The notes under the pieces: model-generated
Databases searched by the model: none
What the model saw: only the letters and a program-made list of their open reading frames with translations
Told to the model about the DNA's origin: nothing
Position numbers and translations under genes: made by a program
Assembly (NCBI GenBank): GCA_000320545.1
Contig: ADNK01000870.1
Span: 62,001-126,000, forward strand
DNA from: Bigelowiella natans CCMP2755
Lineage: Eukaryota; Protista; Cercozoa
DNA length: 64,000 nucleotides
Direction: 5' to 3'
Shown here: positions 1 through 55,665 of the stretch, piece after piece
Layout of the letters: each line of letters begins with the position of its first letter
Position numbering within the stretch: the first letter of the stretch is position 1

Positions 1-2559
1 CCATGCTACCTACCCCTGACAGCTGAAGAGGGAGAACGAATGATGAAGTTTGCAGAAGCTTATGAATTGATCCGGGTTTGTACCGAAAAGGCACAGAATG
101 CGTCCGAAAAAATACAGCGGGAAAAGGATTGCATTCTACAGAAAGTCGAGAAAAACTTTATGTCTGTGGCGAGGAAGCTGGAGACCGAGAAGACTCGAAT
201 CTGTCAAATGGTTAAGAAGAAGTATGGCGTTATCGAGAAGCGGCTGAGCGGCATCAAGGATCAATTAGAAAGTAGCATGGATGTTACCAAAATGACCGAG
301 AAGACTCTGAACAAGCAATCGCGTATCACCGAGTGGTCAGAGCAGAAGGCTCGCAAAGAGCTGATTCTGAAGGAGTCCGCTGCCATACTTGAAACGGTCC
401 ATCCTTTCTTGGTAGGCCTACCTTCTCTAGATGTTGCCTTCGACGACTACATATTCAGTAAGCTTCTGAGCTGTGAGAAGGATCAGAAGGATGGCAATTT
501 TCATGTCTGCGCCTTGAACATAACGCAGCCCGTGGTCGAAGGGAAATCCGTGATACAATCGGAAAAGGCGAAACGCGAGGAGGCGGAGAAGAGGCAGATA
601 GAAGAGGGAAAGGTCGGTTGATAATGTGAACCTAAATCAGAAGGGTAAGTGATATTTTCATTTTTGACCATTACATATCATTATTTTTCTCAGAGAAAAC
701 TGCGTGAGGCAAAACAGGCAGAGGAGAGAAAGACAGCTGCCGAGCGAAAGGATTGGGAAACGATGAGAGCGGCTATGCTCTCGGGTAGTGGTTCATCCTC
801 TCCAAAGAGCTTTGATGAGCCGAAAACGTGGATTCCTCTCAAGGACGCGGACAAGAAGGCCGTTGCGGCGTTCTTCGAGCATGTGAAGACCATTCAAGCC
901 TGGGAACGACGTGGGGTGCAGGCTCTACAGGAGCTCAACAACCATCACCACTACGAGACGAAGCGAGCACTCGCAGAGTTCAAAGCGCTCAATGCCCGTA
1001 TCGACAGAATTAATGCAAACACTGTCGAGTCGCTCGCAGGCACAGCCAAGCAACTCCGTCTGAAATTGCAGATCTCCATTGAGACTCTGCGCAAGCATCT
1101 CAACGAAGACTTGCCAAAGGTGGAGATTGAGCTCAACAAAAGGATCAAGGTGACCGACTTCTCTCTGCTGGAAGAGCGGAGCAAAAGCATTCGAGAATTG
1201 GTCAAAGCGACAATCGAAAAACCACATCCTTTCCTGCTCACAATGCCCAACGTTTCCATCACTCTCAGTCAAGAATTCAAAGAGGCTAAAACCGAGAAGT
1301 TGGTCACTGTCAACTGCACAGATGCGACCACCATGCCCAAATGGACTCTGGGTGTTGGTGGAGTTATTGACATGGCCGGCGGGTTCGAGGCCTTGTTGGA
1401 GACTCTTGGCGGGTTCGAGGCCTTGTTGAAGACTCTTGGCGGGTTCGAGGCCTTATGCAAGGGGGCTGGCGGGTTAGAGGCCTTGTTGAAGACTCTTGGC
1501 GGGTTCGAGGCCTTGTTGAAGACTCTTGGCGGATTCGAGGCCTTATGCAAGGGGGCTGGCGGGTTCGAGGCCTTATGCAAGGGGGCTGGCGGATTCGAGG
1601 CCTTGTTGAAGACTCTTGGCGGATTCGAGGCCTTGTTGAAGACTCTTGGCGGATTCGAGGCCTTATGCAAGGGGGCTGGCGGATTCGAGGCCTTATGCAA
1701 GGGGGCTGGCGGGTTCGAGGCCTTATGCAAAGGGGCTGGCGGATTCGAGGCCTTGTTGAAGACTCTTGGCGGATTCGAGGCCTTGTTGAAGACTCTTGGC
1801 GGGTTCGAGGCCTTATGCAAGGGGGCTGGCGGGTTCGAGGCCTTATGCAAGGGGGCTGGCGGATTCGAGGCCTTGTTGAAGACTCTTGGCGGATTCGAGG
1901 CCTTATGCAAGGGGGCTGGCGGGTTCGAGGCCTTATGCAAGGGGGCTGGCGGATTCGAGGCCTTGTTGAAGACTCTTGGCGGATTCGAGGCCTTATGCAA
2001 GGGGGCTGGCGGGTTCGAGGCCTTATGCAAGGGGGCTGGCGGGTTTCAGAAACTTTGCAAGGTTGGTGGTGGTTTCAAAGCGTTAGTGGATGGTGTGGGA
2101 TACGAAAACTGGTTAAGGTTGGCGGTACAACCATCTCAAATTTTCCGCAATGGGGAAAGATACCCCATGGATGTAACAGGGAATGGAAAAGTTGTGACAA
2201 GTTCAGGGAGAGCTCATGCTTTCGTGTCAGGTGCAGACAATGATCACTGCATCGTGAAGGTGGTGCAACAGGGACACTGCCCCTACAGTGGAATCGCACT
2301 TCTGAATTCTTCAAAGAAATACTCTGGTGGATCTAATGACCTCATGTGTCCATTCCAAGATGGTGACATGCGAAATGCATTTGGGGAAAAGAGGGAAACT
2401 CCCTCTTTCTCCAATGAAGCAGTTGTCATTTTCGCTCGTGAGGAGCAACACGTCACATGGTGTGTGAATGGCAAGCATGAAAGATTTGCAAGACCATCCA
2501 TTGAGACGAATTTGGTGGTGGTTTCGAATGGTGGAAGGGCAAAGTACAAAATCATGTAG
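1..2559 (+). CDS. Coiled-coil protein (TRIM/BBC-like, two copies) with 10-aa tandem repeat and C-terminal beta-rich (SPRY/B30.2-like) domain; probably 5'-partial
   Basis: Frame is open from position 1. ORFs 40..621 and 649..2559 join in frame through a GT-AG intron at 613-693. Two helical blocks each end in HPFLxxxP. The domain family call is inference. Confidence 0.7.
1381..2100 (+). repeat. Coding 30-bp minisatellite: 22 units of two types (GFEALLKTLG / GFEALCKGAG) plus 2 degenerate units
   Basis: 30-bp periodicity is directly visible at 1381-2040, degenerate to 2100. Confidence 0.98.
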
Positions 2560-4260
2560 GTGTTTTTTCACATGACATCAAACGATGCGACTTCGATGTT
2601 CTTGCCATGGATGCATCCCTTGTTAGTTCTTTCTTTTGTGCATCAACCCACACACATGCATGCGCACAGCCCCTGTTTGGTCCATGCGAATCACCTAGAT
2701 TCTTCTAGCCTCTGCAGAGCCGATGCTGACACGACGAGTTCTGTGGCCGTTCCAAGTGACTGCATGACTGGCGCATGGTGCATCTTGTTTCCGATGCATG
2801 CCACAATGTGACCAACCGCTGTTGACAGTTTTTGTGCAGCCACGCTCACCATGTAGAAGCTCAAACAACAATAATGAACGTGTCATAGCATGAGCATCCA
2901 GCTGTGCATCTTGCATGTCTAGGTGTGAGCAGCGCGTGCACAATGCAATGGTGCATGACACTGCTTGATCGGCATGTCTAGATGTGCGTAGCAGTGACAA
3001 CTGTGCTAGTGCGGTCAATCTTGTCACGCATCGATCCCCCAAGCATGCCTGGGACAAGTGACAACGCAACCATGCCGACTCATTGGCGTTCATTGTGAGC
3101 ATGCAATGATGCAATGAACATCATTGGAATGAATGCTGTCTGCAGACTGGCGAACGATGCATTCATTCGTGCGCATCGTTGAGATTTCACAATGTTTTGT
3201 GAAGCTTTGCAACAACAAACACACGCGTTTCTGTTTTTCATGTCACGTCTAGACGTCGTGCATGTGGTGTCACACAAATGTCTAGACATGCTGCAGTGCA
3301 GCTGTTCACACGCCGTTGTTACAGTCTAGCGCAGGCAGCCTTGCAGCAGCCATTCTAGCATTCTAGCATTCTAGCATTGCACTCTAGCATTCATGCATCT
3401 TGTGTCGCGGTGACGATGGCGCCGCTACCGCGCAAATACAGGGACATATATGTCCATGTACGTGTACGCGTAAGGAACACATGTACCCATGCACACCACA
3501 TGCACCTAAAAAGCACACATGCTCTGTGGATGCATGCATGTACATGTGAGCGCTGTCATTTGGCACACATGTAGCTATGGGTACATGTGAAGTACGCGAT
3601 GTACACATGTCGTAGACGGCTACACGTATAGGGACATGCATGTCCATGTACAAACACGTGAAACGTGAGAGGTGAATTGCAAATTTGATCACTGTCATCT
3701 AGCTTCAATCACGTCTCACTGTGTGAACGACTTTGTGAAACATGTGTGATCAAATGAAAGCATCGTGGAAGCCCAAGTTCGCGATGAGAGGATCTAGCCA
3801 TTGCGTTGTCACGCCTGCAATGTCTAGATGTGCATGTGGCTCAGCTTTCGTTTCAAAATCGATGGATCTAGTGATTGAAGCTGAAGATGACTCCATCATT
3901 GACAAATGAATGCGCGCTCATTGCTGGCGATGCGCCACATTGAACAACGAGGTTTGACTCACGTCACAATGTCCTAGATGTTGTTGATTCACACATGTGC
4001 ATCATCCGTGCATGCTTGTCGCACGCGTCATCACAACTGCAGTAAATGTGGTAGCTGCCTCATGCTAATGATAACATGCACGTGCACATGCCAGCATATC
4101 ACATCTAACACGTTTGAGTTTGCAGTTCGTGCCAATCCATGGGATTGTCGAAACAGCATTGACTTAACAAAATCGTCTTCGGACGCACTGCGGACATGAA
4201 TATTTTTAGCATGAACATGATTGCAAGCAAGTGCCCTAAACAATTAACACTTTTACATTA
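2560..4260. other. TpA-depleted, CATG/TGCA/CTAG-rich intergenic island
   Basis: TA occurs mostly in CTAG; the island lies between convergent genes. Confidence 0.8.
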
Positions 4261-23832: not shown

Positions 23833-24369
23833 GCTCTCGTTTCGGAAGATGATTGTGAGGAAAGCAGAAGAAACTATGATGCCAAGACAGGATGATACCA
23901 ATGTAAAATGTTCTACGTATTCAAATGATAAGAAAAACTCAGATGGATTTATTGCACAGATCATCAAAGTTGAATGCTCATTTCTTGTTTTACCGGTCAA
24001 TTTTCTTCGGGAATTCCTACGCGGAACCATCGCCAACCAAACAAACAACTTCAAGTGGGTGAGGATAGTAGTCTCTGACACATTGCAACACAAGTTCACT
24101 AGTAGTAGTCGGTTAATGCTTGTGCATGTGCGCAACGTCGTCCCCGCCCAATAGATCAGTCATTCTTCCGAGTGGTGGTCTCTCCTACAATTATCCATCC
24201 GTTCTGATCTCACACCATCATCATTAAGCTCATATTAACAAGTGAATCCGGTCCAGTCGACAAGTCTTTCTGCAAAAACCGCATCTATATCATGTACCAT
24301 GGAGGAATCCCTGTCAATGACCGGTGCGATTCGGAGATGGGTTCGCCGCCGAAGCCGAAGAGTGAACAG

Positions 24370-25760
24370 CTTCAGTGCACTTTGTCAGTTGGATGATGTC
24401 GAATGAGCACGAATGTCAAATCTTGCAAGTTGGATTTGATTGTCCTTCGCAGGGGCTTCGCACCCTTACAAGCTAGCAAGGTGGACGCTGCTACATGCAA
24501 GTGAACGTTGAAGTTTTTGAGGCCACTTTTCGAGTGCGCCCGTGCAGACGCGTGATGTGAAGTGCACACGTTGTTGTTGCTGCAAAGGCACAATGCACAG
24601 CAGTGTGTCCAAAAGTGCTGCGCGTGATGTCGTGCGTGCACACAGTTGTCGCCCATCCAACCAAGTGCCGCATAGCCGTGCAGCTGGCGTGTGGTTTCTT
24701 TTCTTGGTGACCTGCTGGCCAGCTAGCCAGGCTAGCAGGTCATTGATCGGAGGCGAGGACATGCCAGCGTGGATGAATCAGCACGTCCCATCGCTGAATT
24801 GCAAAACAATTGTGTAGCACCCATGATCCTTTCAATTGCTTTATAGCTTCAATGAAACACTCAATTTTTTCTCTCTGTCTTTCTTTGGCACGTGCGTTCC
24901 AACAATGCAATGATCTTCAGGGCGGATCGACAAGCCAATCGCATCAGCCAGCGAAGATGTCCTTTCAGTTCAACCGCTCCATTGGAATGAATCTACTCAT
25001 TTGTGTTCACCGGTGGGATTTGTCCTTGCTTGAGAGCTTCTTCACGAGGTGCGCTGAATTCATTCTGAAAGCATCATTGTCAAAACAAACGCTCTGGGCT
25101 AGGTCTGCAATTCATCCCTGATTGGTCCGGCGCAGCTGTCGTGGCAGCCAGCGTGCACCATGGTGGTCAATGAAACGAGACAGGTTGAAGGACAGACAAA
25201 ACAAACTCTCATTTGTGCGGTCTGGACAACTAGACAATCGAATGAAGTTCGAAAATTCCATGTGAATGGCGTGATCGACCGCACGTGCCGGCCACGTCTC
25301 GCTCATCTAGTCATACTAGCGCTTCAGAGCAGATGGAATTCTGTGTGACCACCAGCTCTAGAGCTATCTGCAAAGAGCAGACGTGCCTGTTCTATAGTGT
25401 CTACTTGTGGCCGACAAAACATTTGTTCTGACGACAACTGTTCACTGCTTACATCGAGCGCATGAGCGATTCAAACATTTGAAATTTGACACGATGTGAT
25501 CGATGCGTATTGACGTGGCGCGGTCCGTTGCGGGCGCGTTGCCTTGCATCGTTTCTTCGATGCTCCAATGTCCAAATGTGGCACATGTTGGCGATGTTCT
25601 CAATAACAATGATGCATGCTTCCCAATGCATAGTGACTCACAGACACATTCGTGTTTGGAACATTACAGATGGGAAGTGGCACAAGAGCTCATTCGTTGA
25701 TGATAAATGTTCGCTTTCTTCGCCAATGCATGCATTGATTCTTTTGATTAGGTCTTGAAT
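24370..25760. other. TpA-depleted island, possibly decayed gene or element sequence
   Basis: TA is rare outside CTAG; no intact gene recognised. Confidence 0.7.
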
Positions 25761-26649: not shown

Positions 26650-28140
26650 TTTTGGTGCAACGACAACAAAAACTAACAAACAACAACAAACCATTCCTAG
26701 GAGATCCCGACTGCAAAATCCCTTCTTTTTCGGCGTGTGTCCCCGCTGGTTTGCTAGTCTGTCGGTCCTCGCTGAAGCTGTCCAGTTCGAGAGCACTGCA
26801 TTTCGCACGTTGCAAGTGTCTTGTCACACTTTGTGTAATGTGATTTTTCATCATTGTTCTCATTGTTCCGCATTTTGGAAATGCAGTTTGTCAACAATCC
26901 TTGTTCATTGTTCATTGTCCGCGTGTCCCATTTCAACTCATTTGGAAATGTGATTGTTCAACAAAGTTCCTTTCTTTCTTTCTTTCTTTCAACTGCTCTC
27001 TACATCCAATGGAAATCTTTCTTTCTTCTTGATCCTTTGAACCACTCTGACGAAACACTTCTTTCTTTCTTCCTCACTTTCTTTCTTGTTGTCTTTTTGA
27101 GTCACGTGAAACAAGCTAGCAAGCCTTCTTTCTTTTTCCCCTGCGTTGGAACGTCAAACGAACAAGAACCTTGAACTTTGAACTTTTGCTTGAACTTCGC
27201 TTGAAGCGCGTGTAATCGTGTCAGCAGTGCCAGTGGCATGTCGCTTTTGGAATGTCGAACAGACATGAATCTTGAACTTTGCAACGTGCATCGACCGCCG
27301 CCATGTTGCGGACCTTGAACCTTGAACACGAACCTTTCGGTTCGATCGGGTGCACACGTGCTGGTGTGGCACGCAAATCACGACCTAGCGATGCACGTGT
27401 GCTGCAAGGGATGCCAAGTGTGAGGCAATGTCATGGACACAGCCAGACAGTGACACGCACACACGTGCAATGTGTGTGGTGTCACGTGTCTTTCGTCAAT
27501 GCTAAAACATGAATGCCACGACATGCAACTGTTTGTGCACAACTCTAGAACTGTCCAGCTAGCCCCACTAGCTAGCTGTCTAGTCTGGAGCTCTGCCTTG
27601 CAAGTCCAGAAGTCCAGATGTGCACGTCTGGATACGATCGACTGTTCACAAGACGTGCTAACGTGGCATGCCAGCCAGTGCCAGAGTGGTGCAGCTAGCA
27701 AGGTGCTGCGACACAACGCACGATCGAGTGAGCTCACGACGATGCACGGCTAGACTGGGGCAATGACTAGCTTTAACTGTTGCTCTCACTAGCTCACCTT
27801 CATGCGTTGCACGTGCAAAAGCAGAAAAAATGCATGACTGTGCAAGCCAGCAAGACCAACATTGTTGCAGTCACATCTAGACATCGATCAGGACACCGTG
27901 CTCGCCAAAATCATTGCATGCTGTCTGCACTGCTGCCATGCACGTAGATGCACAATGCGACGCGATGCATTTGCAAGTCTTGCTAGCATCAAAAGTCAAA
28001 TGTGCATCACATCCTTTCTGCATGAGTTCCGATTGCACATGTCTGGACAACGTGCAAGATTTTGAAGGGAACCGAATGTGCAGAGTTGCTCATGTTGTAG
28101 GCACTGTTCCCATGCAATGTGCACGACAAAATTGAACACA
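26650..28140. other. TpA-depleted island
   Basis: In 27361-27780 I count 13 TA dinucleotides, 9 of them in CTAG. Confidence 0.8.
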
Positions 28141-43029: not shown

Positions 43030-43740
43030 CCGTAGCTATCTAGCTAGGGATGGCGGGTTGGTCCAGAACACGGACCGTATTAGAGCAGCTGCTAGATGTA
43101 ACCACCGGTTGGCTGTGAGTGTGCTAGCTAGCTAGTGCGTGCTAGAGTGTGATGGCTAGAACTAAAGATCGAAGGACAACATGCTAGCATGGCTAGATGG
43201 ATGCTTGCATGCGATGCTTGCTAGCTTGCATCGTGTCTTGATGACGTGCTCATGCTAGTCATCAGCTAGATCAGTGCCATCTTCATGCGCGCATGTCAAG
43301 ATGCTATGTGCATGCAAAACAGCAAAATGTGTTGTTTGCCAACAACCGCTAGAACTGGTTGTGCTTGCCGCACACGCTGCTAGCTAGCTAGCACGTCTAG
43401 ACGTGCTAGCGTGTAGATCGGATGCGAGCTAGTCAGCATTTAACAACTAGCTTCTCCATCTGCCATCCCACACATAATCTAGATAATAGCACATTGCATG
43501 TCTATCATGCACAGCTGCGCTGCATTGTCATGTGGAATGCATCTAGTTGTGCTGCGATGAGAACTTCAGACGTTTTGCATGCTCTAGTGCCAATTGAAGC
43601 TGTCTGCATCACTAGTTCAGCCATGCTGCATTTGCAAAAGCTTCGCATAGACATCACAAACATGCTCATTGTAAATGACACCAACTTCTATCTACTTTTG
43701 CTTAAATTTTTTATGTGTGATGTGACAATGTGAATGGGAG
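43030..43740. other. TpA-depleted island with a 24-bp perfect palindrome (43387-43410)
   Basis: ctag-dense; palindrome gctagcacgtctagacgtgctagc. Confidence 0.8.
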
Positions 43741-43850
43741 CAAATTGGAGTAATACCCCTATTTTCCATTCGTATCGCGAAACAGATTGTCTAATTTTTA
43801 CCTTAATGCCTCTGCTTGGGTAGCAGATAAATGAGAAGTGAAACAGATAT

Positions 43851-46800
43851 TTAGCCCTGGATGCTGCGACGACCCCAATTATCCGGGACAATGTGTTGAA
43901 TATCCCATCTAAAGATCAAAACAGACTTAATATGTATGATTGTGTCTAGTTTTTCACATACTTACATCCATGGTTTATCGTTCCCCTCATATCGGATAGG
44001 AGGCAAAGAATATGGCAAAGGAAACCTAAATACGGTAATAGGATAACGTTTGCTTTTCCATTTTTGGAGATTTATTATAGTTAGTACTACTTTATGCTGA
44101 TTTCTCCTTTTGTGGGATTGGCGGCAGTTGTAACCATATTCTTTGAACTCGTCGAGCGTTTATTTAATGATGGTAGAAACAAGACCCCAAGCTCCTACGA
44201 ATACGCATTGTTACAAACACAACAGAAATGATGTGGCAATTATTCCTTTCAGTACCCAATGACGAATGAAGAACTGCAGACCAGACCTACCGTTCTGAAA
44301 CTCTCCCCAAGCCTGCATCATAAGTGAGTAGGTAATTTAGTACGCGCATCCAACATTAGCACAGGGAGAGACTAACCGCTTTGCTCAGATTATGACTTGT
44401 TAGAAGCATCCAGGCAAGCTTTTGGGGATTCTCTTTGCTATACCTAAGAAAACAGAAGATTCGCTGGTTAAGGTAAAATACTAACAGTAATTGGAGTAGC
44501 CATCACCGAAGGAAAGTTTTAATATGAGGAGCAGCCTTCCTGTTTTACAAACCGTAAAGTATCAGCCATACTACTATCCAGAGTTTGACAATGTCCACCT
44601 TCTATTGTGAACTTTATCTGTAGCCCATTTATGAAACATTCCTTGAAGAAATGGCTTAATAACGTTCTTTTCGTATCCTGGTATAGATCCACCAGCTGCG
44701 TAGCCTGCAAACAAAATCGCTCGAAATTATAGAGGAATACAAACCAGTCGTTGTCAGTACCTTCCAATGATGTTCTCACTTCTTCAACTGTTGGCCATAT
44801 TATTTGAAGTTTCTCCACTACAATAACAAACGGACATGGATAGGAGAAGTCTTATTGTAAAGAAGTGAATATACCACATAGATATAGGATGAAACTGTAT
44901 GAGAGACTAGGAGAAGGCGGCGGGTACCGGAAGAAATGTTCATCTTGGAATCCGCGCAATCATTAAGAGTCTGTTTCCCTGTTGATGTAAAAATAACCTG
45001 TTATTGGATCTCCAACATGATCTACTTCCCGATGTTGTTAATTGTTGGATAATCTCCGAATTTATATAGTTTATCAAATTTCGCCGCACCAGCACTCATT
45101 GACTTCTTGAAATCTGCCAACCATTTCTGACTGAGCGAACCTAAATTACAGATAGAAAATAATAATTGCCGATAATATCTATTTCATTCTTTATGATAAT
45201 ATTACTTCGGATGATAATATGGAAAATTGCTTTCGCATTCTGCTGAACTTACCGAGACTGGAAAATTGAGCCACTACATTAGATTCATCAAAATCAGATG
45301 AGAATTTCTCGTCTCCAAGAATGCCTTTAAAAGATTAAATGGTATAATAAACAACAACAACTTCAATTCAAATGAATTATATAACTTCTTAGCTTTGCAT
45401 GGCCAAATAAATGCAATTGATTTCCGCGATGCCAACCCGGGGCACTTCCTGCCAAATATAGCAGATCATTTTTATGGGGGTGGGGACAAGAAGGAGGAGG
45501 ATGGGGAGGAGGGGGAAGAAGAGAACTTACCTATCAGCCGTACATTTGCCTTGGAGTAATCATACCTCCTTAGACTATCCACTATGGACGACAACGAAAA
45601 TCGCTATCATTCAATGTCATATAATTTAGAGAATCAAGGTTTTGACCTGATAGTTGTCGGATTTTATCGTTATTCACAGGATCCCTCCAAGAGCTCCCTC
45701 TCCATCTTACCTATACAAATAAGCTATTTTGTCAAGTGACTGAAGTACTTCCCAGGTTGCTACTATCATCAACACTTTCCCTCTATCCCCGTCATAATCA
45801 CCATCAACATCAACATCATCTTAATCATCATCACCACGCACGCACCTTATATGTTGCCATGTATGTCATTAGATCCTCCTCGAAGTCTGAACAATTTGGG
45901 CTTCTTTCATTGCCTATCACTTGTTTTGACTGCTGCTGCTGCTTTAGAGGAAAATCCATTTCCCACGATCCTTGAGACTTGTTCCAGAAATCCCCTACGA
46001 ATAGTAAACTTATATAAAATTGTAGACCACGTTGTGAACAACTACAAAATTGTAGAAGAAGAAAGTTTTAAACGAAAACTTGTGGTGAAATAACAATACA
46101 GATTTCTCCGCCTCCTCCTCCTCTACCTGGTATAAGATTCGCAGTGTGGACAACAACACGTATTTCTGACAGAAGAGTAGTTAATAAATATTGAGAATGA
46201 TTTTTGATAGTGATGGTGTAGGTAGGAACGTTGATGTAGTAGTTCCAATAGCACTATAATGGTGGCTAGTTGTATTGAGCATTGGCAATTTCATATTGAG
46301 ATGCTAATAGAATATAGTTTTTGTTCTAATCATAGTACGGGGAGATAGAGATAGGAATAATAATGGTGTATCTAAGCAGGCAGCTACAGCAAATACTAAT
46401 TCAGAAAGGATAGGAACAAATAGGACAAAGTCGCAGGAAGCTGGAATCAGAGATAAAACATTATGGAAGCAACCAACCCCAAGAATTGTACGTGGGAACA
46501 ACTGTTTTGGTTAGCATTACTATCGGAAAACATTATATATCCTCCTATTTACAGAGAGGAGGCTAAGAAGAGTAAGGAACCTATGTATACCTATATATTT
46601 TCTGGTCTAACCCACCTGTAGCAAACCCAATGAGGAATGATTTCGTATGGAAGACTCCGTATCTATTTAGAGCAAAACTTGCTTCATATTCCCATAGTTG
46701 CGAACAATTATTTGAATAAATTGCTTCTTGTTTCACCTGATTCTATGTGTTTTCTCGGGTTCCATACAGAATGATTGGAAGTTTTCAGGTAGTTGAGACG

Positions 46801-49260
46801 GGATGATGTCGTCGCTCCTTCCGTGAAAAATCAATACCTTTCCGTAAAAACCGTATGTTTTAGAATATCGTATATAAAAAGGGAATCATTACGAGAAAAT
46901 AGAGAAAGAAAATTGCGCAGTCGCCCAATATTTTACCCTAGAAGTTATCCCACCACCATATTGTACTAGGAGAAGTGGAGAGTGAGGAGGGAGAGGAGGA
47001 GGAGGAGAGAGGGGGGATGGTGACGATGGGATCTAATAAGCAAATACCTTTGGAACGGCGTGCAATTCAGGCCATTGCTGAAGCAGCCAAGGGATATTTA
47101 TCTGAAATAGGAAGAAAGACCAACATTAGATTGATTTCTATTTAGGGGAGTACCAGTGTTTGTTGTTTATTACCATGTAATTGGCGATTATAACCCATTC
47201 TGGTTGAACAATGTCATCAGCACGAACCATGCCTCTCAAATCTACCGACATTTCCTGAGGCATTGTTAGAAGTATCACGTAGTTTATGAATGAGTACAAA
47301 CCACCGAATAATAAGAGTTCTTCACCATTACCATGATTACCACCACCACCACCACCACCACCATCATCATCATCATTATCCGTTCGTTCAAATTAGTAGT
47401 CAGTTTAAAAAAAAATGAATTCTGTGGTGCTACTCTCCTGTGTACAGCAGTAGTGCGAACAAATATTTCACTCTCCTCCGTTTCACCATGGTGGATTCAA
47501 TATTTTCCTTCTCCCTAGACTTCCATACATTTGCTGATGGAGGAAGTCCGTGCTTACGGCTCAGTTTGAGCAATCGAAAAGTGCCAGCACTAGAAGCAGC
47601 AGGAGTAGTTTCAGTAATTGAAGGAGTAGTAGTAGCGATGGTTGAGTAGCTCAAGTCCTCCTTCACATCCTGGGCCGAAACTTTATCTGATGATCTCTCT
47701 TTTTTATTCGCACCTTGGCTTGCAGAAACGTTCTCGATCTCAATATATTGTCGTTTTCTAGGGGGTAATAATCAAACAATATATTCGCATAAATGATCAG
47801 GAGAGATTCACTTGAAAGACTAACAGCGTAATCAGTGTTTAAACAGTAGGTCGAAGTGTTTAATTGTAATTCCCTCCCTATTTTTCCTTCACCTGGATCC
47901 AGATACTGCCTTTCGTCGTTGAGCGATCTTTCCTCTGTCGCTGTCAGGGTAGTCGTTGCTACTGGTACTAGTACTGGTCTCGTGAACAACCGTAGTAGTA
48001 GCACTTTGATCGTCCGGAAGGCTAGTAGCAGTATCTCTGCGAGCAGCCCGATTCACAAGGGAATATAACTGACCTACACGATCTGCTGTCTTGTCATCCT
48101 TGTATTCATAATAATAACGGTCAAAATATAATAATGAATACGAACACAAACACAAACAAAAGAGGAGGGGGGTGAGCACAACTGCTGCTACTGCTGCTGA
48201 TACCATTACGATGTGCGCAAACAGTAGCAACACTAGTAAGCAGTGGTGATATCATAAATAAAACTCGCTTATAATTATTATTCTACTTTGTACTACTACT
48301 GCTACAACTACAACCACTACTACAATTCTTACTACCGTGCAGACAGAAATTAGCTTGAAACCTTCTTCATACCTTGGTACCACCTATGTAAAATAAAAAG
48401 CGATTGAGACAGAGAGCGCGAGAAATAGAAAGGTTCGAAGAGAAAGAACTTCTCAATGTATGAGGGCGACAAAGAGGAAAGTTCCACTGAAACTGCAATC
48501 AACGCGTAATGGGTTGTTGTTATTGTTCTTCTCAAAAAATTTTGTAGAACAAAAATATTATCAAGGAAAAAATACTAGGGTTCTTGTGCTATGCGGCTGC
48601 TGATTGTTACTACATCAGTATTATTAGGATTTAGTGTCACTACTAATTAGCATTCACTATCACTGTTCAGGATATAGAAACAACGAATGGATGTCACAAA
48701 AAACGAACCAATTTAGCATGAGAGAGGCGCGACAATTGAGCGCCTTTGGGACCAAAAACAGCATGGTTTTTCCTTGTCAATACTCGGTTAGATGCTAGAA
48801 CAGCGGATGGCAGCAAGACCTAAGATTTAGATATAAAAGAAGCACCAAATTCGGTAGTATAACCTTTTCTTGATTATTGAATCTAATCTCGTTTTAAACT
48901 TTGATATCACAGTCGATGTTGATCAGTCACTACCACAGCATGGCACTTCACATTCAGATCTTTGGCAATCTTCAAGAAAGGAAGTCTCTACGAAAAATAT
49001 GAATACAATACGAAGTCAGTTACCTCTACCGTTTTGTTTCAACATTTCTCCTTCACTCCCCACCCACCTGTGATGGAACTAAATGCATCCGGTCAATCAG
49101 AACGCTACGCCCTTCCATGAGAGCATTCTTTGCTCTTTTCTAATATTCAACGTGTATTAACAAAGATAGTCGTCAGATTGGTGCGCTTGCGGTAAATGGC
49201 TATTATATTGTACTAAATCGACTTAAAATACAACCACCACAGCCACAATCACTACCACTA

Positions 49261-49295
<35 letters not shown>

Positions 49296-49532
49296 GCACC
49301 TACTACTTCCGTGATTTAATTTAAATGCTGCGTCACTATTACTGCTACGACTACCAAGCACATCTCTATAGTGCCTCTGTTCCCATTTCTTATAGTATCC
49401 TAAAAAATATGTAGCACTATAATGATGATGATGATGATAATGGTGGTGGTGGTGGTGGTGATGATGATGCACTAATATTATGATAGAGCAGTAAATGTAC
49501 AATCAGACATTACTATTTCTTATTTCCACCTT

Positions 49533-49566
<34 letters not shown>

Positions 49567-51634
49567 CTGATTAATCTGAACCCATCCTCCATCTTCTTCC
49601 TCATTTGATTTAATCATTTTTAGGCAAAATGTGGATTTACCCGCACCCTGCGGCCCGCACATGATAACCATCAAAGGTCCTTTTAGTCTAAGTTTATTTC
49701 AAAGGTGGGGTTGCAAGGAAAACAATCACAAGCAAAACTTCCAGGAAACAAATATGGACATGCCTTCTTCCGTAAAGCATGCCTCGCTCAAGTGTTGCTC
49801 TGGAGTCCTTCTCGAATGCCCTTAGAACTTCGACTCGATTATCCACTTTGCTTTCTCCAAAACATTCTTCAGGGGTTAAAAATCTACAAGGAAAAAAGGA
49901 GAGATCAGCTACTACAATTGTAGGTATGAAAGCTTAGAAAAATGAATTAACGAAGAGCAATCTCCTTAGTTGTCTTAATAGTAATAAAGATTTTACTTAA
50001 TTCCCACAGATTCTGCAAACTTCCGATCCGAATCGCTGATATTGTTAGTTTGGATCATTTTAAATGAAATTCATTGCAACGTCACGAGTACTGTTACTAC
50101 TACTACCACCTATGGTCCTGACGTCGACCAGCTGCATCTCCAACGAACAAGCTCAACGACTTATCGAGAAGAATTTGGGGTTGGTGAGCAACATCGTCAC
50201 CTAACTTATCACGTCTTTTTTCCATTATATCCTTCATTTTCTGCCACATCCTTGTACCTATTCCCTGTCAGCATAAGCTTTCTGTTAGGCACTAGGTGCA
50301 CAATCGTGGGTACCATCACCTACTTTACGGAAACTATCCTTTTGGGTCGCCATGAAAACATCAACGGGGACTTCCAAACGTCGAATAGTCTGAAGGAAAG
50401 ATCGATTTACTGTGAAGAGATTAGGGGGGTGGTTTGAAAGGAAACCTGCTCTATTGCCCATTTTACTGTGCTCGCTCGTTTTCCTTGATGTGCACCCTTA
50501 ATTCCATTTTGATTTGTAAATATTACAATCCCGTAGCCGTCTGCAAAGAGGCGCCGAATCTGTACCGAAATTATAAGAAGCTCTTACTACTCCATATTGA
50601 ACGCTATTACTACGTAGAATTATCCCACAACATGCTCGCAATCAAATCAAATGCACAGTAGAACACCTTTTGGATCACCACATTTGTGGGGAAAATGTAA
50701 TCCGATTTTTGTAGTGCCATAGAGGACCCTCCACGCGCATGAACCAAAGTCCTTTTACGTAGTTTAACAAACATAAAGATCAAATCTCTTACTATGAACA
50801 CGACTAAAGATCACCACCCGTCGAAATCGAAGCCTGCTATCTTCGATTGAAATACACCGTGTTTAAGATAAAGGAGACTGTTTCCTAGAGATTTCCAAAC
50901 GAAAGCATTGGGACGAAATTTTTCATGGACATCTAAGGGCCCCAAGCTTTTTGCAGCAGCTTTGCTTTGAAGATTCTTGGTTTGGATATGTACGATTCCC
51001 TCAGGTATTGTACCTTGGAGACCTTTTATGAGACTGAATGGTAAGCATCATTATTCTGACAAAACTGAAAATGAATTCACCTATCTTATCTCCATGCTGT
51101 AATTGTATCGTCTCACCATGTTTAACCTTATAGCTGAAAAGCATTGGAGTAAAATAAAACATTGCAAAAGACGATGTTAAAAAATCTACTGCTAGAAGTA
51201 AACTTAAGCTTACGTTTTGCCGCCACGAAGTACGACTGTTGGATTTGTCTTTGATAGTGTCTCGACCTGGAGAATTTGTACGACAAGGTCAGCTGACATT
51301 TTGTTGCGAGCTTGGGGAATACCAGTCAACCTTTGCACCACAATTTTCTGCAGCCTTAATTCGGCACTGAGTAGAATTTTGCGCATATTATTGGTCAATC
51401 TCTGGTCGATCGCGAATTCAAAAGCACCTTAGAAATTTTTACTTCAGATACCTGCGTTTTGCTAACAAAGAAGCTCCGAGTTAGATGATCGGCCCTTCCT
51501 AACGTTCTTTCTGTCCCGGGTTGCATGTGGACACGTGAGCCGCACGGTAGTAAGAGAAGAACAGCAACAAATGGAGATGACAGCTTATCATCTTTCGTTT
51601 GATCCGAAGCCATTGCCGTTAAGTGAGTTGCCAT
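43851..51634 (-). CDS. FHA + polynucleotide 3'-phosphatase + 5'-kinase (PNKP-like) + tyrosyl-DNA phosphodiesterase 1 fusion
   Basis: FHA (LGR..SKTQ, NPT); HAD motifs KIAGFDFDG|TLV, VIFTNQNGI, FVGDAAGR, DSDRKFA, FLTPEECF; P-loop GPQGAGKST, NQ|DT, VLIDR, EGF; TDP1 motifs ANYM, FHTK, HTANL, QFSSL, WPTVEEVRTSLEGY, PHIKT, SHNLSKAAWG, ELGVLF. Confidence 0.85.
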
Positions 51635-52092
51635 GCTTTTCGCCTGGACTCGTTGGTGCTATATTCAGCTTCTCAAGATAGATGCAATCAAACCATCCTC
51701 ATCATCATCATCATCATCTTCTTCTTCTTCTGCATCACATTCATCCCCTCCCTCGTTGCCAGTGGTGAGGTGGCGATCTCGATTTTGGATAAAGCATCTG
51801 ATTGATGAATGACATAGGGGATTTTTTGTTGTCGTCAAATCAAATGGATTGTCTTACAACAGAAAACTGAGAACATAGTTTGTTATGAGCACCCGTTGAA
51901 CGCCTTCCTAATGCTACATTCCGTCATGTGGGAGGGTAAAACATCTTTGACACCCATGTCGCAGTGTATAAATGACCTACATTGCTCAAAGTTCTTTCGA
52001 TGGCTGTCGACGTGACCTCAACCAGAGCATGCATGCATACTTTATTAGATACATGATCAAATGACACCGCTGCTTGCTTCAGAATAGTGCAT

Positions 52093-54387: not shown

Positions 54388-55665
54388 ATGGGAAGGGCAA
54401 AGGAAGCGCCAGAGGGAGTGTTAGTTCCCTTGTGGAGGTTTCTCTACGCTCCATCATCAACCCCATATGCATTTATGTGGATGATCGTGATGATGGCAGT
54501 AACGATTGGTTCTGTCGTCGCGACAGTCGCATGCTCTATCCCCCCGGAATATGTAAATCGTTCGAATTGGGAACTTGCAGACTCCATTTTCAACTGGATA
54601 TACACAGGAGAACTATTCCTAATCGTTGTTGCCTATATCAAGAATCCAAAATTAATGATGTATGATTGGATTATCTATTGCGAGTTTTTGACTCTGATTC
54701 CATTTTGGATCGATGAGGCTGTGAGGCATAATGCGGAGGACGACCGACCACTCGGTCCTATGGAGTCCTTTCGTATGTTGCGATTGTTGCAGCTAGCAAG
54801 ATACTATGATGGCATCGAACTGGTACTCGGATCAGTAAGACGCAGTTTTTTTGCGTTGTTAGTGCCACTGTGCTATCTGTTCATCGCTGGCCTCTTCTTC
54901 GCCCAGCTAATATTTGAAGTAGAGCGTAAGGAGAATCCCGACATTAATTCAATACCACAAGCTTACTACTTTATCATAATCACGATGACTACTGTTGGCT
55001 ATGGAGATGTCAGTCCCGTCACTCCCTTAGGGAAGGCTATTGGGTGCTGCGTGGTCCTGTTCGGAATTGTATTCTTAGCACTTCCACTTGCTGTAGTAGG
55101 TCAAGAATTTCTCGATTCATGGGAAGCTAAAAGCCTGGAGCGTATTAGTCGGAGAGTAGGCCTTGCTATGGAAGAGAAATCAATGTCCAACACAGAATTC
55201 GTCCAGCAACTAACTTCAAAGTCCCAGGATGGAATCTTGATTGATAAGTCCGCTCTTGAAGAATTCATGATACAGATTGGCGTATCCCTAACTCCGCGAC
55301 AGCTTTCGAAACTCATTGAATACCTGAAAAGTGGATCTTGTGAACCTGTAAAGGTTGCACATTTAGCTGAAACTCTGTTGCAGGGTTGCCCCGACTACTT
55401 TGCAGTCGTTGGCGGTAGGAAAAAAGAAAAGCAGGGGAAGCATTATGTGCTCATGTTAGATGAGAAAGAGAATGGTGGCGGCGAAACAAGGAATGGTAGC
55501 TCCTCTGTATATGACAAATTTCCGAACAAGGGGTATTCGAAAGAAGTGACTGGAAAGCTTAACAGTTTGCTAGAGGCTCAGGTTCGCTTCGAAGTTGCAC
55601 TTAAAGACATGAAGAGACTTACGAGCGCTCTTTCCCAGGAAATTGCCGCCGCAGGCACAAAATAA
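54388..55665 (+). CDS. Voltage-gated-type (6TM) potassium channel, intronless
   Basis: TMTTVGYGD filter, S4-like FRMLRLLQLARY, S6 LALPLAVV; single 425-aa ORF. Confidence 0.92.
   Translation: MGRAKEAPEGVLVPLWRFLYAPSSTPYAFMWMIVMMAVTIGSVVATVACSIPPEYVNRSNWELADSIFNWIYTGELFLIVVAYIKNPKLMMYDWIIYCEFLTLIPFWIDEAVRHNAEDDRPLGPMESFRMLRLLQLARYYDGIELVLGSVRRSFFALLVPLCYLFIAGLFFAQLIFEVERKENPDINSIPQAYYFIIITMTTVGYGDVSPVTPLGKAIGCCVVLFGIVFLALPLAVVGQEFLDSWEAKSLERISRRVGLAMEEKSMSNTEFVQQLTSKSQDGILIDKSALEEFMIQIGVSLTPRQLSKLIEYLKSGSCEPVKVAHLAETLLQGCPDYFAVVGGRKKEKQGKHYVLMLDEKENGGGETRNGSSSVYDKFPNKGYSKEVTGKLNSLLEAQVRFEVALKDMKRLTSALSQEIAAAGTK

What the first reader, a model, noticed from the sequence alone, without database searches (positions are those of the whole stretch)
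43851..51634. One gene appears to fuse FHA, PNKP phosphatase, polynucleotide kinase and TDP1 into a single Top1-break end-processing enzyme
Seen: the ORF track misses this because exons are short, but splicing gives the HAD motif DFDGT (50818-50844 plus next exon), FTNQ, GDAAGR, P-loop GPQGAGKST (49631-49656) and both TDP1 catalytic motifs, HTK (46641-46649) and HIK (44518-44526). The kinase-to-TDP1 linker exons (EGFKLISVCT|DDKTADR...GSR|KRQY...FRLLKLSRKHGLPPSAN|EMSVDL) are phase-compatible with no stop. There is also no TpA-depleted island between the two parts, unlike every other gene 3' end in the window. Established: TDP1 leaves a 3'-phosphate and Top1 a 5'-OH, which PNKP converts to 3'-OH/5'-P; in animals, fungi and plants they are separate proteins. 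Inference: substrate channelling within one chain. I do not recall a characterised PNKP-TDP1 fusion but cannot search.
Basis: partly seen in the sequence, partly recalled or inferred. Interest (0 to 1): 0.9.

Follow-up and report, generated by a model that had tools for sequence, protein, structure and literature searches.

The report
Fused PNKP–TDP1 DNA break-repair gene
One expressed 39-exon gene of the alga Bigelowiella natans puts an FHA docking domain, a DNA 3'-phosphatase, a DNA 5'-kinase and the topoisomerase-I clean-up enzyme TDP1 on a single 1119-residue protein; a second chlorarachniophyte genus has the same fusion, other eukaryotes I could search keep these enzymes apart, and I found no paper describing it.

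Summary
The minus strand from 51707 to 43634 carries one 39-exon gene (CDS 51634-43851, 1119 codons). Spliced transcript contigs from three studies run without a break from the 5'UTR through the PNKP exons and both linker exons into TDP1. A 3649-nt public cDNA contig aligns to the window in 39 blocks at about 100% identity. The organism is Bigelowiella natans.

Pfam on the transcript-derived protein gives PNK3P (132 bits), AAA_33 kinase (47 bits) and a full-length Tyr-DNA_phospho match (291 bits). The N-terminus folds as an FHA domain of the PNKP/aprataxin/APLF class. All catalytic motifs are intact.

Amorphochlora amoebiformis has a 1159-residue orthologue (49% identity) with the same architecture. 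Among 120 best TDP1 relatives, 34 long PNKP relatives and 80 environmental TDP1 loci, no other protein combines the two.

The enzymes are joined by a roughly 100-residue, poorly conserved, low-confidence linker. This suggests a tethered hand-off rather than a channel.

The FHA, the segment just before the catalytic domain and TDP1 resemble plant FHA-TDP1, so a PNKP cassette was probably inserted into such a gene.

The genome annotation holds only a 335-residue fragment. Activity is untested. The scan also flagged a different TDP1 gene in this genome.

The parts
43634..51707 (-). Whole transcription unit, 39 exons. The 5' end is at or beyond 51707 and the 3' end at 43634.
   Evidence: The 3649-nt cDNA contig L012 (JGI 3300017095, Ga0186110_100526) aligns in 39 blocks at about 100% identity. 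Logan contigs from three studies are spliced the same way.
43851..51634 (-). Coding sequence of 3360 nt, giving 1119 residues plus a TAA stop. An in-frame stop lies upstream of the ATG at 51634.
   Evidence: Exon-by-exon translation matches P0001/P0005.
51006..51571 (-). FHA domain (residues about 22-114), spread over exons 1-5. Phosphopeptide-binding signature: G46-R47 (51499-51494), S58-K59 (51463-51458), N81 and D106.
   Evidence: Pfam FHA scores 17.7 bits, below the 20.7 cut-off. The AF2 model has core pLDDT 75-94. Foldseek top hits are the APLF, PNKP and aprataxin FHA domains. The signature columns are invariant in A4.
49859..50843 (-). HAD-type DNA 3'-phosphatase (PNK3P, residues 169-338). 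Motifs: DFDGT (50828-50818 plus 50751-50748), FTNQ (50520-50509), RK (50329-50324), GDAAGR (50141-50124).
   Evidence: Pfam PF08645 scores 131.9 bits on P0001. hhalign to animal PNKP gives E 2e-42. Mouse PNKP structures match at E 1.5e-32. Coordinates were checked.
49688..49763 (-). The only non-GT intron of the gene (GC-AG, 76 nt). It lies between the phosphatase-kinase connector exon and the P-loop exon.
   Evidence: cDNA block ends are at 49764 and 49689/49687. The tally is 37 of 38 donors GT and 38 of 38 acceptors AG.
48054..49671 (-). P-loop polynucleotide 5'-kinase (residues 376 to about 535). It has Walker A GPQGAGKST (49656-49630), the catalytic Asp of 'NQDTI' (49399-49397) and the Walker-B-region Asp in 'LIDRMH'. 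It ends with helix DRVGQLYSLV, which corresponds to the C-terminus of animal PNKP.
   Evidence: Pfam AAA_33 scores 46.9 bits. The AF2 model has pLDDT above 85.
47583..48053 (-). Inter-enzyme linker (residues 536-647). It covers the rest of exon 18 and most of exon 19 and spans intron 18 (47892-47758). It is Ser/Thr-rich, with no Met and no stop.
   Evidence: The spliced joint 47757>47893 appears in contigs from three runs. Identity to Amorphochlora is 24%, and the length is 112 versus 184 aa. AF2 pLDDT is 26-45 over residues 544-646.
43854..47582 (-). TDP1 catalytic domain (residues 648-1119), from the end of exon 19 to exon 39. First HKN motif: HTK 46649-46641 and N 46139-46137. Second HKN motif: HIK 44526-44518 and N 44391-44389. 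ELG is at 44194-44186.
   Evidence: Pfam PF06087 scores 290.8 bits and covers 3-445 of 445 profile positions. Human TDP1 structures match at E 3e-65. hhalign to plant TDP1 gives E 8e-105. Coordinates were checked.
43634..43850 (-). 3' UTR, about 217 nt.
   Evidence: Last cDNA block 43908-43634.
51635..51707 (-). 5' UTR, at least 73 nt. Logan contigs run a further 38 nt or so beyond 51690.

Best explanation
This is a real, single-copy, expressed gene of Bigelowiella natans. Its one reading frame encodes, in order:
- an FHA phosphopeptide-docking domain;
- a flexible stretch of about 25 residues;
- the two-domain catalytic core of polynucleotide kinase/phosphatase (HAD 3'-phosphatase, then P-loop 5'-kinase);
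- a disordered tether of about 100 residues;
- a complete TDP1.

Shown here: the gene structure, the transcript, the architecture, its conservation in Amorphochlora and the integrity of every catalytic motif.

Inferred from established TDP1 and PNKP biochemistry: the protein carries out all three end-cleaning steps needed after an abortive topoisomerase-I cut, and for other 3'-blocked breaks such as 3'-phosphoglycolate.
1. TDP1 removes the 3'-linked tyrosyl or peptide adduct and leaves a 3'-phosphate.
2. The phosphatase converts that to 3'-OH.
3. The kinase phosphorylates the 5'-OH, so the nick can be filled and ligated.

The FHA domain would recruit the enzyme to a phosphorylated scaffold or chromatin partner. 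Because the modules are beads on a flexible string, the likely gain is high local concentration and hand-off at one break, plus fixed 1:1:1 stoichiometry, rather than a closed channel.

Probable origin (inference): a PNKP catalytic cassette without its own FHA was inserted between the FHA and the pre-catalytic linker of a plant-type FHA-TDP1 gene.
For: Transcript evidence:
- One spliced contig per run in three studies covers the 5'UTR, all PNKP exons, linker exons 47893-48097 and 47528-47757, and the TDP1 exons. All joints are GT..AG on the minus strand.
- The cDNA contig L012 aligns in 39 blocks from 51707 to 43634.
- MMETSP ORF P0001 and JGI ORF P0005, both 1119 aa, match the window exon by exon.
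- Only this locus matches P0001 in the genome.

Domains: Pfam gives PNK3P 131.9, AAA_33 46.9 and Tyr-DNA_phospho 290.8 bits.

Structure matches:
- Human TDP1 at E 3e-65 and mouse PNKP at E 1.5e-32 by sequence against the PDB.
- FHA fold with APLF, PNKP and aprataxin as top hits.

Conservation and distribution:
- Orthologue P0006 (Amorphochlora, UniRef100_A0A7S0GYA7, 1159 aa) has the same Pfam architecture and invariant catalytic residues.
- No other PNKP+TDP1 protein appears among the 120 best TDP1 hits, 34 long PNKP hits and 80 environmental TDP1 loci.

Linker: 24% identity, variable length, pLDDT 26-45, whole-model pTM 0.53.

Origin:
- The FHA resembles plant TDP1 FHAs (z up to 8) but not animal PNKP FHAs (z about 1).
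- The pre-catalytic segment aligns with plant TDP1.
- The nearest PNKP relatives start without an FHA.
Against: - No enzyme activity, protein size or localisation was measured.
- The runs behind the Logan contigs are labelled RNA only by guess, although contigs lacking 38 introns can only come from spliced RNA. The one certified raw RNA run gave only 9 reads on the stretch.
- Contigs cannot exclude additional shorter isoforms. A low-depth contig retains intron 19 (47387-47546, depth 4 versus 33), which would end the frame after the PNKP part.
- Some kinase residues differ from animal PNKP: 'DRMH' for 'DNTN', and 'RKG' for 'RKP' in the phosphatase.
- The FHA is below Pfam's sequence cut-off.
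- Only two genera are documented. Other chlorarachniophytes could not be searched separately.
- The origin scenario rests on four animal PNKP FHAs as the only comparison set.
Confidence: 0.8

Rival explanations
1. Two neighbouring genes (FHA-PNKP and TDP1) are joined only by read-through transcription or by a chimeric assembly. On this view the cell makes two separate proteins.
For: The official JGI model covers only the last 335 residues. The NCBI models for Amorphochlora are partial pieces of 466 and 649 aa. Contigs cannot prove a single molecule, which is the tool's own caveat.
Against: - Exon 18, which carries the C-terminal helix of the kinase, is spliced directly to exon 19, which carries the first strand of TDP1. 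The phase fits and there is no stop.
- There is no Met between residues 443 and 667, so a TDP1-only protein would lack its first conserved strand.
- Independent assemblies from three studies plus MMETSP and JGI give the same junction.
- A second genus has the same continuous ORF at 49% identity.
Confidence: 0.03
2. The fusion is real, but one module has lost catalysis and serves only as a DNA-end binding or scaffolding part. The most likely candidates are the divergent kinase or the phosphatase. The canonical PNKP encoded elsewhere in the genome would then do that chemistry.
For: - The genome has a separate PNKP at C1539. It carries the FDMDGTLI, FTNQ, YRKP, GDAAGR and GPPASGKS motifs. It matches sea-urchin PNKP P0150 in four exons but the fused protein P0001 in only one.
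- The fused copy has 'DRMH' for 'DNTN' and 'RKG' for 'RKP'.
Against: - The nucleophile and general-acid Asp residues, motif II Thr, motif III Lys and motif IV GDAAGR are present.
- Walker A Lys, the catalytic Asp of the kinase and the Walker-B Asp are also present.
- All of these are invariant between two genera that are only 47-55% identical in these domains. That argues for selection on catalysis.
Confidence: 0.12
3. The enzyme's main job is not topoisomerase-I breaks. Instead it cleans oxidative 3'-blocked ends in general (3'-phosphoglycolate, 3'-dRP after AP-lyase action) in a photosynthetic cell. TDP1 followed by PNKP is also the known order of action for such ends.
For: From established knowledge, TDP1 also removes 3'-phosphoglycolate and processes AP sites, leaving a 3'-phosphate for PNKP. 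The TDP1 half is of the plant type.
Against: Nothing in the sequence separates the two substrate classes. The 5'-kinase is needed for Top1 breaks (5'-OH) but not for most oxidative breaks (5'-phosphate), and keeping it favours the Top1-type substrate.
Confidence: 0.25

Closest known systems
Mammalian PNKP (FHA + HAD 3'-phosphatase + P-loop 5'-kinase; structures 3ZVL, 1YJ5, 1UJX, 2W3O)
   Same: The N-terminal half has the same order of three modules, the same catalytic motifs and a C-terminal helix equivalent to the PNKP C-terminus. hhalign gives E 2e-42 over the catalytic core. PDB sequence matches reach E 1.5e-32. The FHA fold matches PNKP FHA.
   Different: The frame does not stop after the kinase. 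It runs on through a roughly 100-residue linker into TDP1. The FHA sequence is closer to plant TDP1 FHAs than to animal PNKP FHAs. Identity in the core is about 33%, with 'DRMH' for 'DNTN'.
Human/yeast TDP1 (PLD-superfamily tyrosyl-DNA phosphodiesterase; 1JY1, 6DHU)
   Same: Full-length catalytic domain with both HKN motifs and the ELGVLFLPS strand.
   Different: Human TDP1 has a disordered regulatory N-terminus and meets PNKP only through the XRCC1/ligase III complex. Here the N-terminal extension is an entire PNKP.
Plant TDP1-alpha (FHA + TDP1; for example P0024 Vicia, P0007 Riccia; PMC7762302)
   Same: These are the nearest TDP1 relatives, at about 40% identity and E about 1e-96. They share an N-terminal FHA of the PNK type, the pre-catalytic 'FRLL..GLP..AN' segment and, in Amorphochlora, the acidic 'DEAFARQLQAE' motif.
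   Different: Plants have nothing between the FHA and TDP1 except a linker. Their 3'-phosphatase (ZDP) is a separate protein without a kinase domain (from memory of Petrucco et al. 2002, as cited in PMC4878875).
Other natural fusions of DNA-end-processing enzymes seen in the searches: PNK3P + aprataxin-type HIT (P0162, Hondaea fermentalgiana), NAD-ligase + BRCT + PNKP (P0159), PNKP + aldo/keto reductase (P0131-P0147), ubiquitin + PNKP (P0013)
   Same: PNKP modules are joined to another enzyme or adaptor in one chain. The aprataxin and ligase cases also join consecutive steps of break repair.
   Different: None contains TDP1. They come from other lineages, or from unassigned metagenome or sequencing-run assembly contigs.
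Bacterial trifunctional Pnkp of the Pnkp-Hen1 RNA repair system (kinase-phosphatase-ligase), recalled from memory
   Same: The idea is the same: several consecutive end-healing activities sit on one polypeptide. The kinase modules of Clostridium thermocellum Pnkp appear as weak PDB matches (4MDE and 4JST at E about 1e-6).
   Different: It is an RNA repair enzyme with a different phosphatase fold (metallophosphoesterase), has no TDP1 and is bacterial.

Membership tests
TDP1 (Pfam PF06087 Tyr-DNA_phospho, PLD superfamily) | Full-length match to the family profile above the curated cut-off | tested here: met
   290.8 bits against a cut-off of 22, covering profile positions 3-445 of 445 at residues 653-1094 of P0001. 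At exon level on the window the score is 21.7-29 bits.
TDP1 (Pfam PF06087 Tyr-DNA_phospho, PLD superfamily) | First HKN motif (human H263, K265, N283) | tested here: met
   H749-T-K751 at 46649-46641 and N769 at 46139-46137. They align to human 'HHTK...HTSNL', are invariant in Amorphochlora, and the coordinates were checked.
TDP1 (Pfam PF06087 Tyr-DNA_phospho, PLD superfamily) | Second HKN motif (human H493, K495, N516) | tested here: met
   H999-I-K1001 at 44526-44518 and N1023 at 44391-44389. They align to human 'PHIKT...TSANLSKAAWG'.
TDP1 (Pfam PF06087 Tyr-DNA_phospho, PLD superfamily) | Hydrolysis of a 3'-phosphotyrosyl-DNA bond | not testable with these tools
   Needs recombinant protein and an oligonucleotide substrate.
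PNKP (bifunctional polynucleotide phosphatase/kinase) | HAD-type 3'-phosphatase: PNK3P profile above cut-off, with motifs DxDGT, T (FTNQ), K and GDxxGR | tested here: met
   PF08645 scores 131.9 bits against a cut-off of 22. D174-F-D176-G-T178, T220, K265 and G307-DAAGR are all invariant in A1. Coordinates were checked.
PNKP (bifunctional polynucleotide phosphatase/kinase) | P-loop 5'-kinase: Walker A GxxGxGK[ST] and the catalytic Asp of the 'N[RQ]D[TS]' motif | tested here: met
   AAA_33 scores 46.9 bits against a cut-off of 27. GPQGAGKST and D411 in 'INQDTI' align to 'VNRDT' of animal PNKP.
PNKP (bifunctional polynucleotide phosphatase/kinase) | Walker-B-region 'DNTN' as in animal PNKP | tested here: inconclusive
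   The Asp is kept (D441) but the motif reads 'DRMH' in both genera. The effect on activity is unknown.
PNKP (bifunctional polynucleotide phosphatase/kinase) | N-terminal FHA domain, by sequence profile | tested here: not met
   Pfam FHA PF00498 scores 17.7 bits against a cut-off of 20.7. FHA_2 (PF17913) is not reported. No FHA chain appears in PDB sequence searches.
PNKP (bifunctional polynucleotide phosphatase/kinase) | N-terminal FHA domain of the PNKP/aprataxin/APLF class, by fold and signature residues | tested here: met
   The AF2 model of residues 1-135 has nine strands and core pLDDT 75-94. Foldseek top hits are APLF (5E50, 5W7W), mouse PNKP (1UJX, 1YJM) and aprataxin (3KT9), at E 3-6e-4, probability 1.0 and target TM 0.63-0.69. 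G46-R47 and S58 are invariant and N81 and D106 nearly invariant across 20 FHA-bearing proteins. UniRef names the orthologue 'PNK FHA domain-containing protein'.
PNKP (bifunctional polynucleotide phosphatase/kinase) | Protein ends after the kinase domain (canonical three-module architecture) | tested here: not met
   The frame continues for about 580 more residues into TDP1.
Plant-type TDP1-alpha (FHA directly followed by linker and TDP1) | FHA and TDP1 separated only by a linker | tested here: not met
   About 400 residues of PNKP core lie between them. The FHA, the pre-catalytic segment and TDP1 are nevertheless closest to this family.

The most novel reading that the evidence does not exclude
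In chlorarachniophytes the only canonical TDP1 exists as part of this fusion. The fusion arose when a PNKP catalytic cassette was inserted into a plant-type (possibly endosymbiont-derived) FHA-TDP1 gene. The covalent link then replaces the XRCC1-type scaffold that couples TDP1 and PNKP in animals. That would make the protein a self-contained enzyme which turns a topoisomerase-I-linked nick into a ligatable one, faster than the separated parts can.
Probability: 0.3. Interest if true: 0.65.

Novelty: new variant of a known kind. Interest (0 to 1): 0.55.

Why it matters
TDP1 and PNKP are textbook consecutive enzymes of single-strand-break repair. In animals they are brought together only through the XRCC1 scaffold.

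- **Independent evidence for the pathway.** A natural fusion of both, kept in at least two genera, is 'Rosetta-stone' evidence for the pathway order outside animals and fungi.
- **A ready-made experiment.** It allows a direct test of whether physical coupling speeds hand-off of the toxic 3'-phosphate intermediate.
- **A possible reagent.** A single-chain enzyme that turns 3'-blocked, 5'-OH nicks into ligatable ends could be useful in the laboratory.
- **Domain history.** The fusion shows how end-processing modules (FHA, PNKP core, TDP1, HIT, ligase) are shuffled among protists.
- **An annotation problem.** The B. natans reference model is a 335-residue fragment and the Amorphochlora genome models are partial. 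Architecture surveys based on those annotations will miss the fusion.

The biology it implies is expected rather than surprising, which limits the score.

Tried and rejected
- I then worked from coordinates only.
- **Exon-by-exon Pfam.** This gave only sub-threshold, though colinear, matches. It was useful as a consistency check, not as proof.
- **My first hand model.** It had four errors: one FHA exon was really two, the donor and acceptor around the GC-AG intron were wrong, and two small TDP1 exons were missed. All were corrected from transcripts.
- **Representative-library search with one exon.** It found only the protein itself plus two irrelevant repeat proteins, P0002 and P0003.
- **Raw RNA run X21.** Only 9 reads landed on the stretch, so starts, ends and strand could not be read.
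- **First metagenome scan.** It used FHA patterns and confirmed nothing.
- **Second metagenome scan.** It gave 80 TDP1 loci, none with a PNKP part within the flanks. The closest, L077, is a plant FHA-TDP1 gene.
- **ESM Atlas.** It returned only ordinary PNKP clusters at a score of 0.8.
- **The look-up of encoding contigs for P0006.** It found no record.
- **Long TDP1 hits P0014 and P0015.** These are tandem or merged TDP1 proteins, not PNKP fusions.
- **Genome-wide exon-level scans for XRCC1_N and FHA_2.** Both were blank. This says little in an intron-rich genome, and FHA_2 matched nothing in the control genomes either.
- **Phylogeny.** I did not build trees, because the proteins in hand are the top hits only (mostly land plants) and would not give a fair test of origin.
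- **Joined spliced model.** It was never sent to any search, fold or comparison tool. Searches used single exons by reference and then the public transcript proteins P0001 and P0005. Scripts joined exons only to count codons and stops; one search also wrote that translation to scratch, where it stayed unused.

Full report
**1. What is in the window**

Six-frame translation of the minus strand between 51.7 and 43.8 kb shows short open segments carrying PNKP-like and TDP1-like motifs. I built an exon model from GT/AG sites and reading phase. It gave one uninterrupted frame from ATG 51634 to TAA 43851.

Exon-by-exon Pfam scans by reference gave weak but colinear matches:
- PNK3P at profile positions 39-69, 76-96 and 101-130.
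- AAA_33 at 1-23.
- Tyr-DNA_phospho at 128-171 and 358-377.

A six-frame HMM scan of the whole assembly placed Tyr-DNA_phospho and PNK3P signals at this locus. It also found two other loci.

**2. Transcript evidence**

Twenty public runs hold 0.20-0.36 of the sampled words of the 7.8-kb stretch. That is what a spliced mRNA of a gene that is 42% exon would give.

I laid four runs on 45700-51690.
- Three runs from three studies each contain one long contig: 2849, 3530 and 2505 nt, at depth 33-72.
- Each contig runs from the 5'UTR through all PNKP exons, then linker exons 47893-48097 and 47528-47757, into the TDP1 exons and about 970 nt beyond the laid stretch.
- Every listed joint has CT..AC ends on the plus strand, which is GT..AG on the coding strand.
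- Record arithmetic fits the exon model base for base after three corrections.
- The raw RNA run gave only nine reads.

The run labels 'RNA' are guesses. However, a contig that lacks all the introns of a single-copy gene can only derive from spliced RNA.

**3. Public full-length ORFs**

A search of 1.84 billion representatives with one 67-residue exon returned P0001. This is a complete 1119-residue MMETSP ORF, identical over the exon at residues 110-176.

Its cluster holds:
- P0005, a JGI copy on a 3649-nt contig.
- P0004, the JGI Bigna1 model 60976 of Bigelowiella natans. It is only the C-terminal 335 residues.

This names the organism. It also shows that the reference annotation misses the fusion.

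The cDNA contig L012 (ORF 74-3433) aligns to the window in 39 blocks from 51707 to 43634 at about 100% identity. That fixes all exons.
- CDS exons are 33-229 nt (median 64). Introns are 56-450 nt.
- 37 of 38 donors are GT; one is GC at 49763. All acceptors are AG.
- The two transcript ORFs differ at five residues, and the window is a mosaic of both. This points to allelic or strain variation.

**4. Domains and catalytic residues**

Pfam on P0001:

| Family | Residues | Bits |
|---|---|---|
| FHA | 49-110 | 17.7 (below the 20.7 cut-off) |
| PNK3P | 169-338 | 131.9 |
| AAA_33 | 376-486 | 46.9 |
| Tyr-DNA_phospho | 653-1094 | 290.8 (profile 3-445 of 445) |

Sequence search of the PDB matches human TDP1 (E 3e-65) and mouse PNKP (E 1.5e-32).

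The motifs present are:
- Phosphatase: DFDGT, FTNQ, RK, GDAAGR.
- Kinase: GPQGAGKST, the kinase Asp in INQDTI, and D441.
- TDP1: HTK...N, HIK...N and ELG.

All of these are invariant in the orthologue. Their window coordinates were verified.

Differences from animal PNKP are 'DRMH' for 'DNTN' and 'RKG' for 'RKP'.

For the FHA:
- An AlphaFold model of residues 1-135 has a nine-strand core with pLDDT 75-94.
- Its best PDB matches are the FHA domains of APLF, PNKP and aprataxin.
- The GR...S...N...D signature is conserved.

**5. Overall shape**

A full-length model built from a 51-sequence alignment has mean pLDDT 81. It shows three confident modules: residues 22-114, 140-543 and 647-1119. Two low-confidence stretches separate them, at 115-139 and 544-646. 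The pTM is 0.53, so no fixed arrangement of the modules is predicted.

Between the two genera the catalytic domains are 47-57% identical. The inter-enzyme linker is only 24% identical. It measures 112 versus 184 residues and is rich in Ser and Thr.

This is a tether, not a channel.

**6. Distribution**

Amorphochlora amoebiformis has P0006 (UniRef100_A0A7S0GYA7). It is 1159 residues long and 49% identical over the full length, with the same Pfam architecture. Its genome models at NCBI are partial.

No other protein combining the two enzymes turned up:
- Among the 120 best TDP1-part hits (of 461), only P0001 and P0006 carry PF08645.
- Among 34 long PNKP-bearing proteins, only these two carry PF06087.
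- Among 80 environmental TDP1 loci with up to 6 kb of flank, none has a PNKP part.

Five literature searches and two papers read in part gave no description of such a fusion.

Limits of this survey:
- The word-based search sees only proteins of 615-1958 residues.
- Only the top hits are listed.
- Other chlorarachniophyte transcriptomes could not be queried separately.

**7. Origin**

- The TDP1 half is closest to streptophyte and other green-lineage FHA-TDP1 proteins, at about 40% identity.
- Profile alignment with them extends upstream of the catalytic domain. It covers 'FRLL..GLP..AN' and, in Amorphochlora, an acidic 'DEAFARQLQAE' motif that plants also have.
- The FHA of the fusion scores z 5-8 against many plant TDP1 FHAs but z about 1 against four animal PNKP FHAs.
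- The nearest PNKP relatives are PNKP plus aldo/keto reductase proteins from unassigned metagenome or sequencing-run assembly contigs. They have no FHA.

The simplest reading is that a PNKP core was inserted into an FHA-TDP1 gene. This is an inference and needs proper trees.

**8. Paralogues**

The genome also holds two related genes.
- A canonical-looking PNKP on contig C1539. It matches sea-urchin PNKP P0150 in four exons but the fused protein P0001 in only one.
- A divergent FHA-TDP1 on C1362, with HPK...SSANL and HAK...SHNLSPNAWG motifs.

The fusion therefore carries the only canonical TDP1 I could find in this genome.

The scan had flagged the C1362-type gene as a different TDP1 fusion (s1-732916). 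My PNK3P scan gave no signal on that contig.

**9. Mechanism and verdict**

From the established chemistry, TDP1 leaves a 3'-phosphate and topoisomerase I leaves a 5'-OH. PNKP's two activities repair exactly these two ends. The fusion therefore holds the complete end-cleaning set for a topoisomerase-I break.

Shown here: gene, transcript, architecture, conservation and intact motifs.

Inferred: the activities themselves, their cooperation at one break, and FHA-mediated recruitment.

I rate this a new variant of a known kind. It is a neat natural fusion rather than unexpected biology.

Noticed in passing
window 900-3300, 24300-25200, 26700-27400: Strongly TpA-poor tracts: TA observed/expected 0.08-0.25 in 300-nt windows, with TA-free runs up to 276 nt. 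The window median is 0.72. None lies at either end of the PNKP-TDP1 gene, so they are not a general mark of gene 3' ends here.
   Followed up: partly
window 49688-49763 (minus strand): A GC-AG intron, confirmed by cDNA. It is the only non-GT donor among the 38 introns of the gene.
   Followed up: yes
window 49530-49566, 49240-49310, 48290-48335, 47340-47385 (minus strand, inside introns): Several introns begin with or contain runs of GTA/GTG (and complementary) triplet repeats directly after the donor site. Read laying skipped some of these as repeats.
   Followed up: no
window 47387-47546: A low-depth contig (depth 4 versus 33 for the mRNA contig) retains intron 19. If translated, it would stop shortly after the linker and give an FHA-PNKP protein without TDP1. 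It may simply be pre-mRNA.
   Followed up: no
G000:C1539:7100-9800 (+), loci L009/L011: A separate PNKP gene with the FDMDGTLI, FTNQ, YRKP, GDAAGR, TPEEFF and GPPASGKS motifs. It matches sea-urchin PNKP P0150 in four exons but the fused protein P0001 in only one.
   Followed up: partly
G000:C1362:20900-24300 (-), loci L001/L003/L010: A second, divergent TDP1 gene preceded by an FHA domain, with HPK...SSANL and HAK...GSHNLSPNAWG motifs. My genome-wide PF08645 scan gave no signal on this contig.
   Followed up: partly
proteins P0131-P0147, P0011 (metagenome and sequencing-run assembly contigs from JGI, ENA, NCBI and Logan): A family of at least 18 clusters in which a PNKP core (phosphatase plus kinase, no FHA) is fused to an aldo/keto reductase domain. 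These are the nearest relatives of the PNKP half of the fusion. Their organisms are unknown.
   Followed up: no
proteins P0159, P0162, P0013: Other end-processing fusions: NAD-dependent DNA ligase + BRCT + PNKP (1032 aa, Logan contig), PNK3P + aprataxin-type HIT in Hondaea fermentalgiana (716 aa), and ubiquitin-like domain + PNKP (1072 aa).
   Followed up: partly
P0006 residues about 640-660; L077:455-1588 (plant TDP1 ORF): An acidic helix motif sits between the FHA and TDP1 in plants (DEA[LF]AR.LQ.E, in the plant contig 'EDEALARTLQES'). It looks like a ubiquitin-interacting motif (recalled from memory, untested). The Amorphochlora linker keeps it and B. natans has lost it.
   Followed up: no
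P0004 (JGI Bigna1 60976), P0163/P0164 (GAB5368019.1, GAB5369819.1): Reference gene models of both algae hold only fragments of the fusion: 335 aa for B. natans, and 466 and 649 aa for Amorphochlora. The Amorphochlora pieces sit on two different contigs.
   Followed up: partly
window 54388-55665 (+): A 425-residue single-exon ORF that looks like a potassium-channel-type pore protein with the TVGYGD selectivity-filter motif. It lies upstream of the PNKP-TDP1 gene on the other strand.
   Followed up: no
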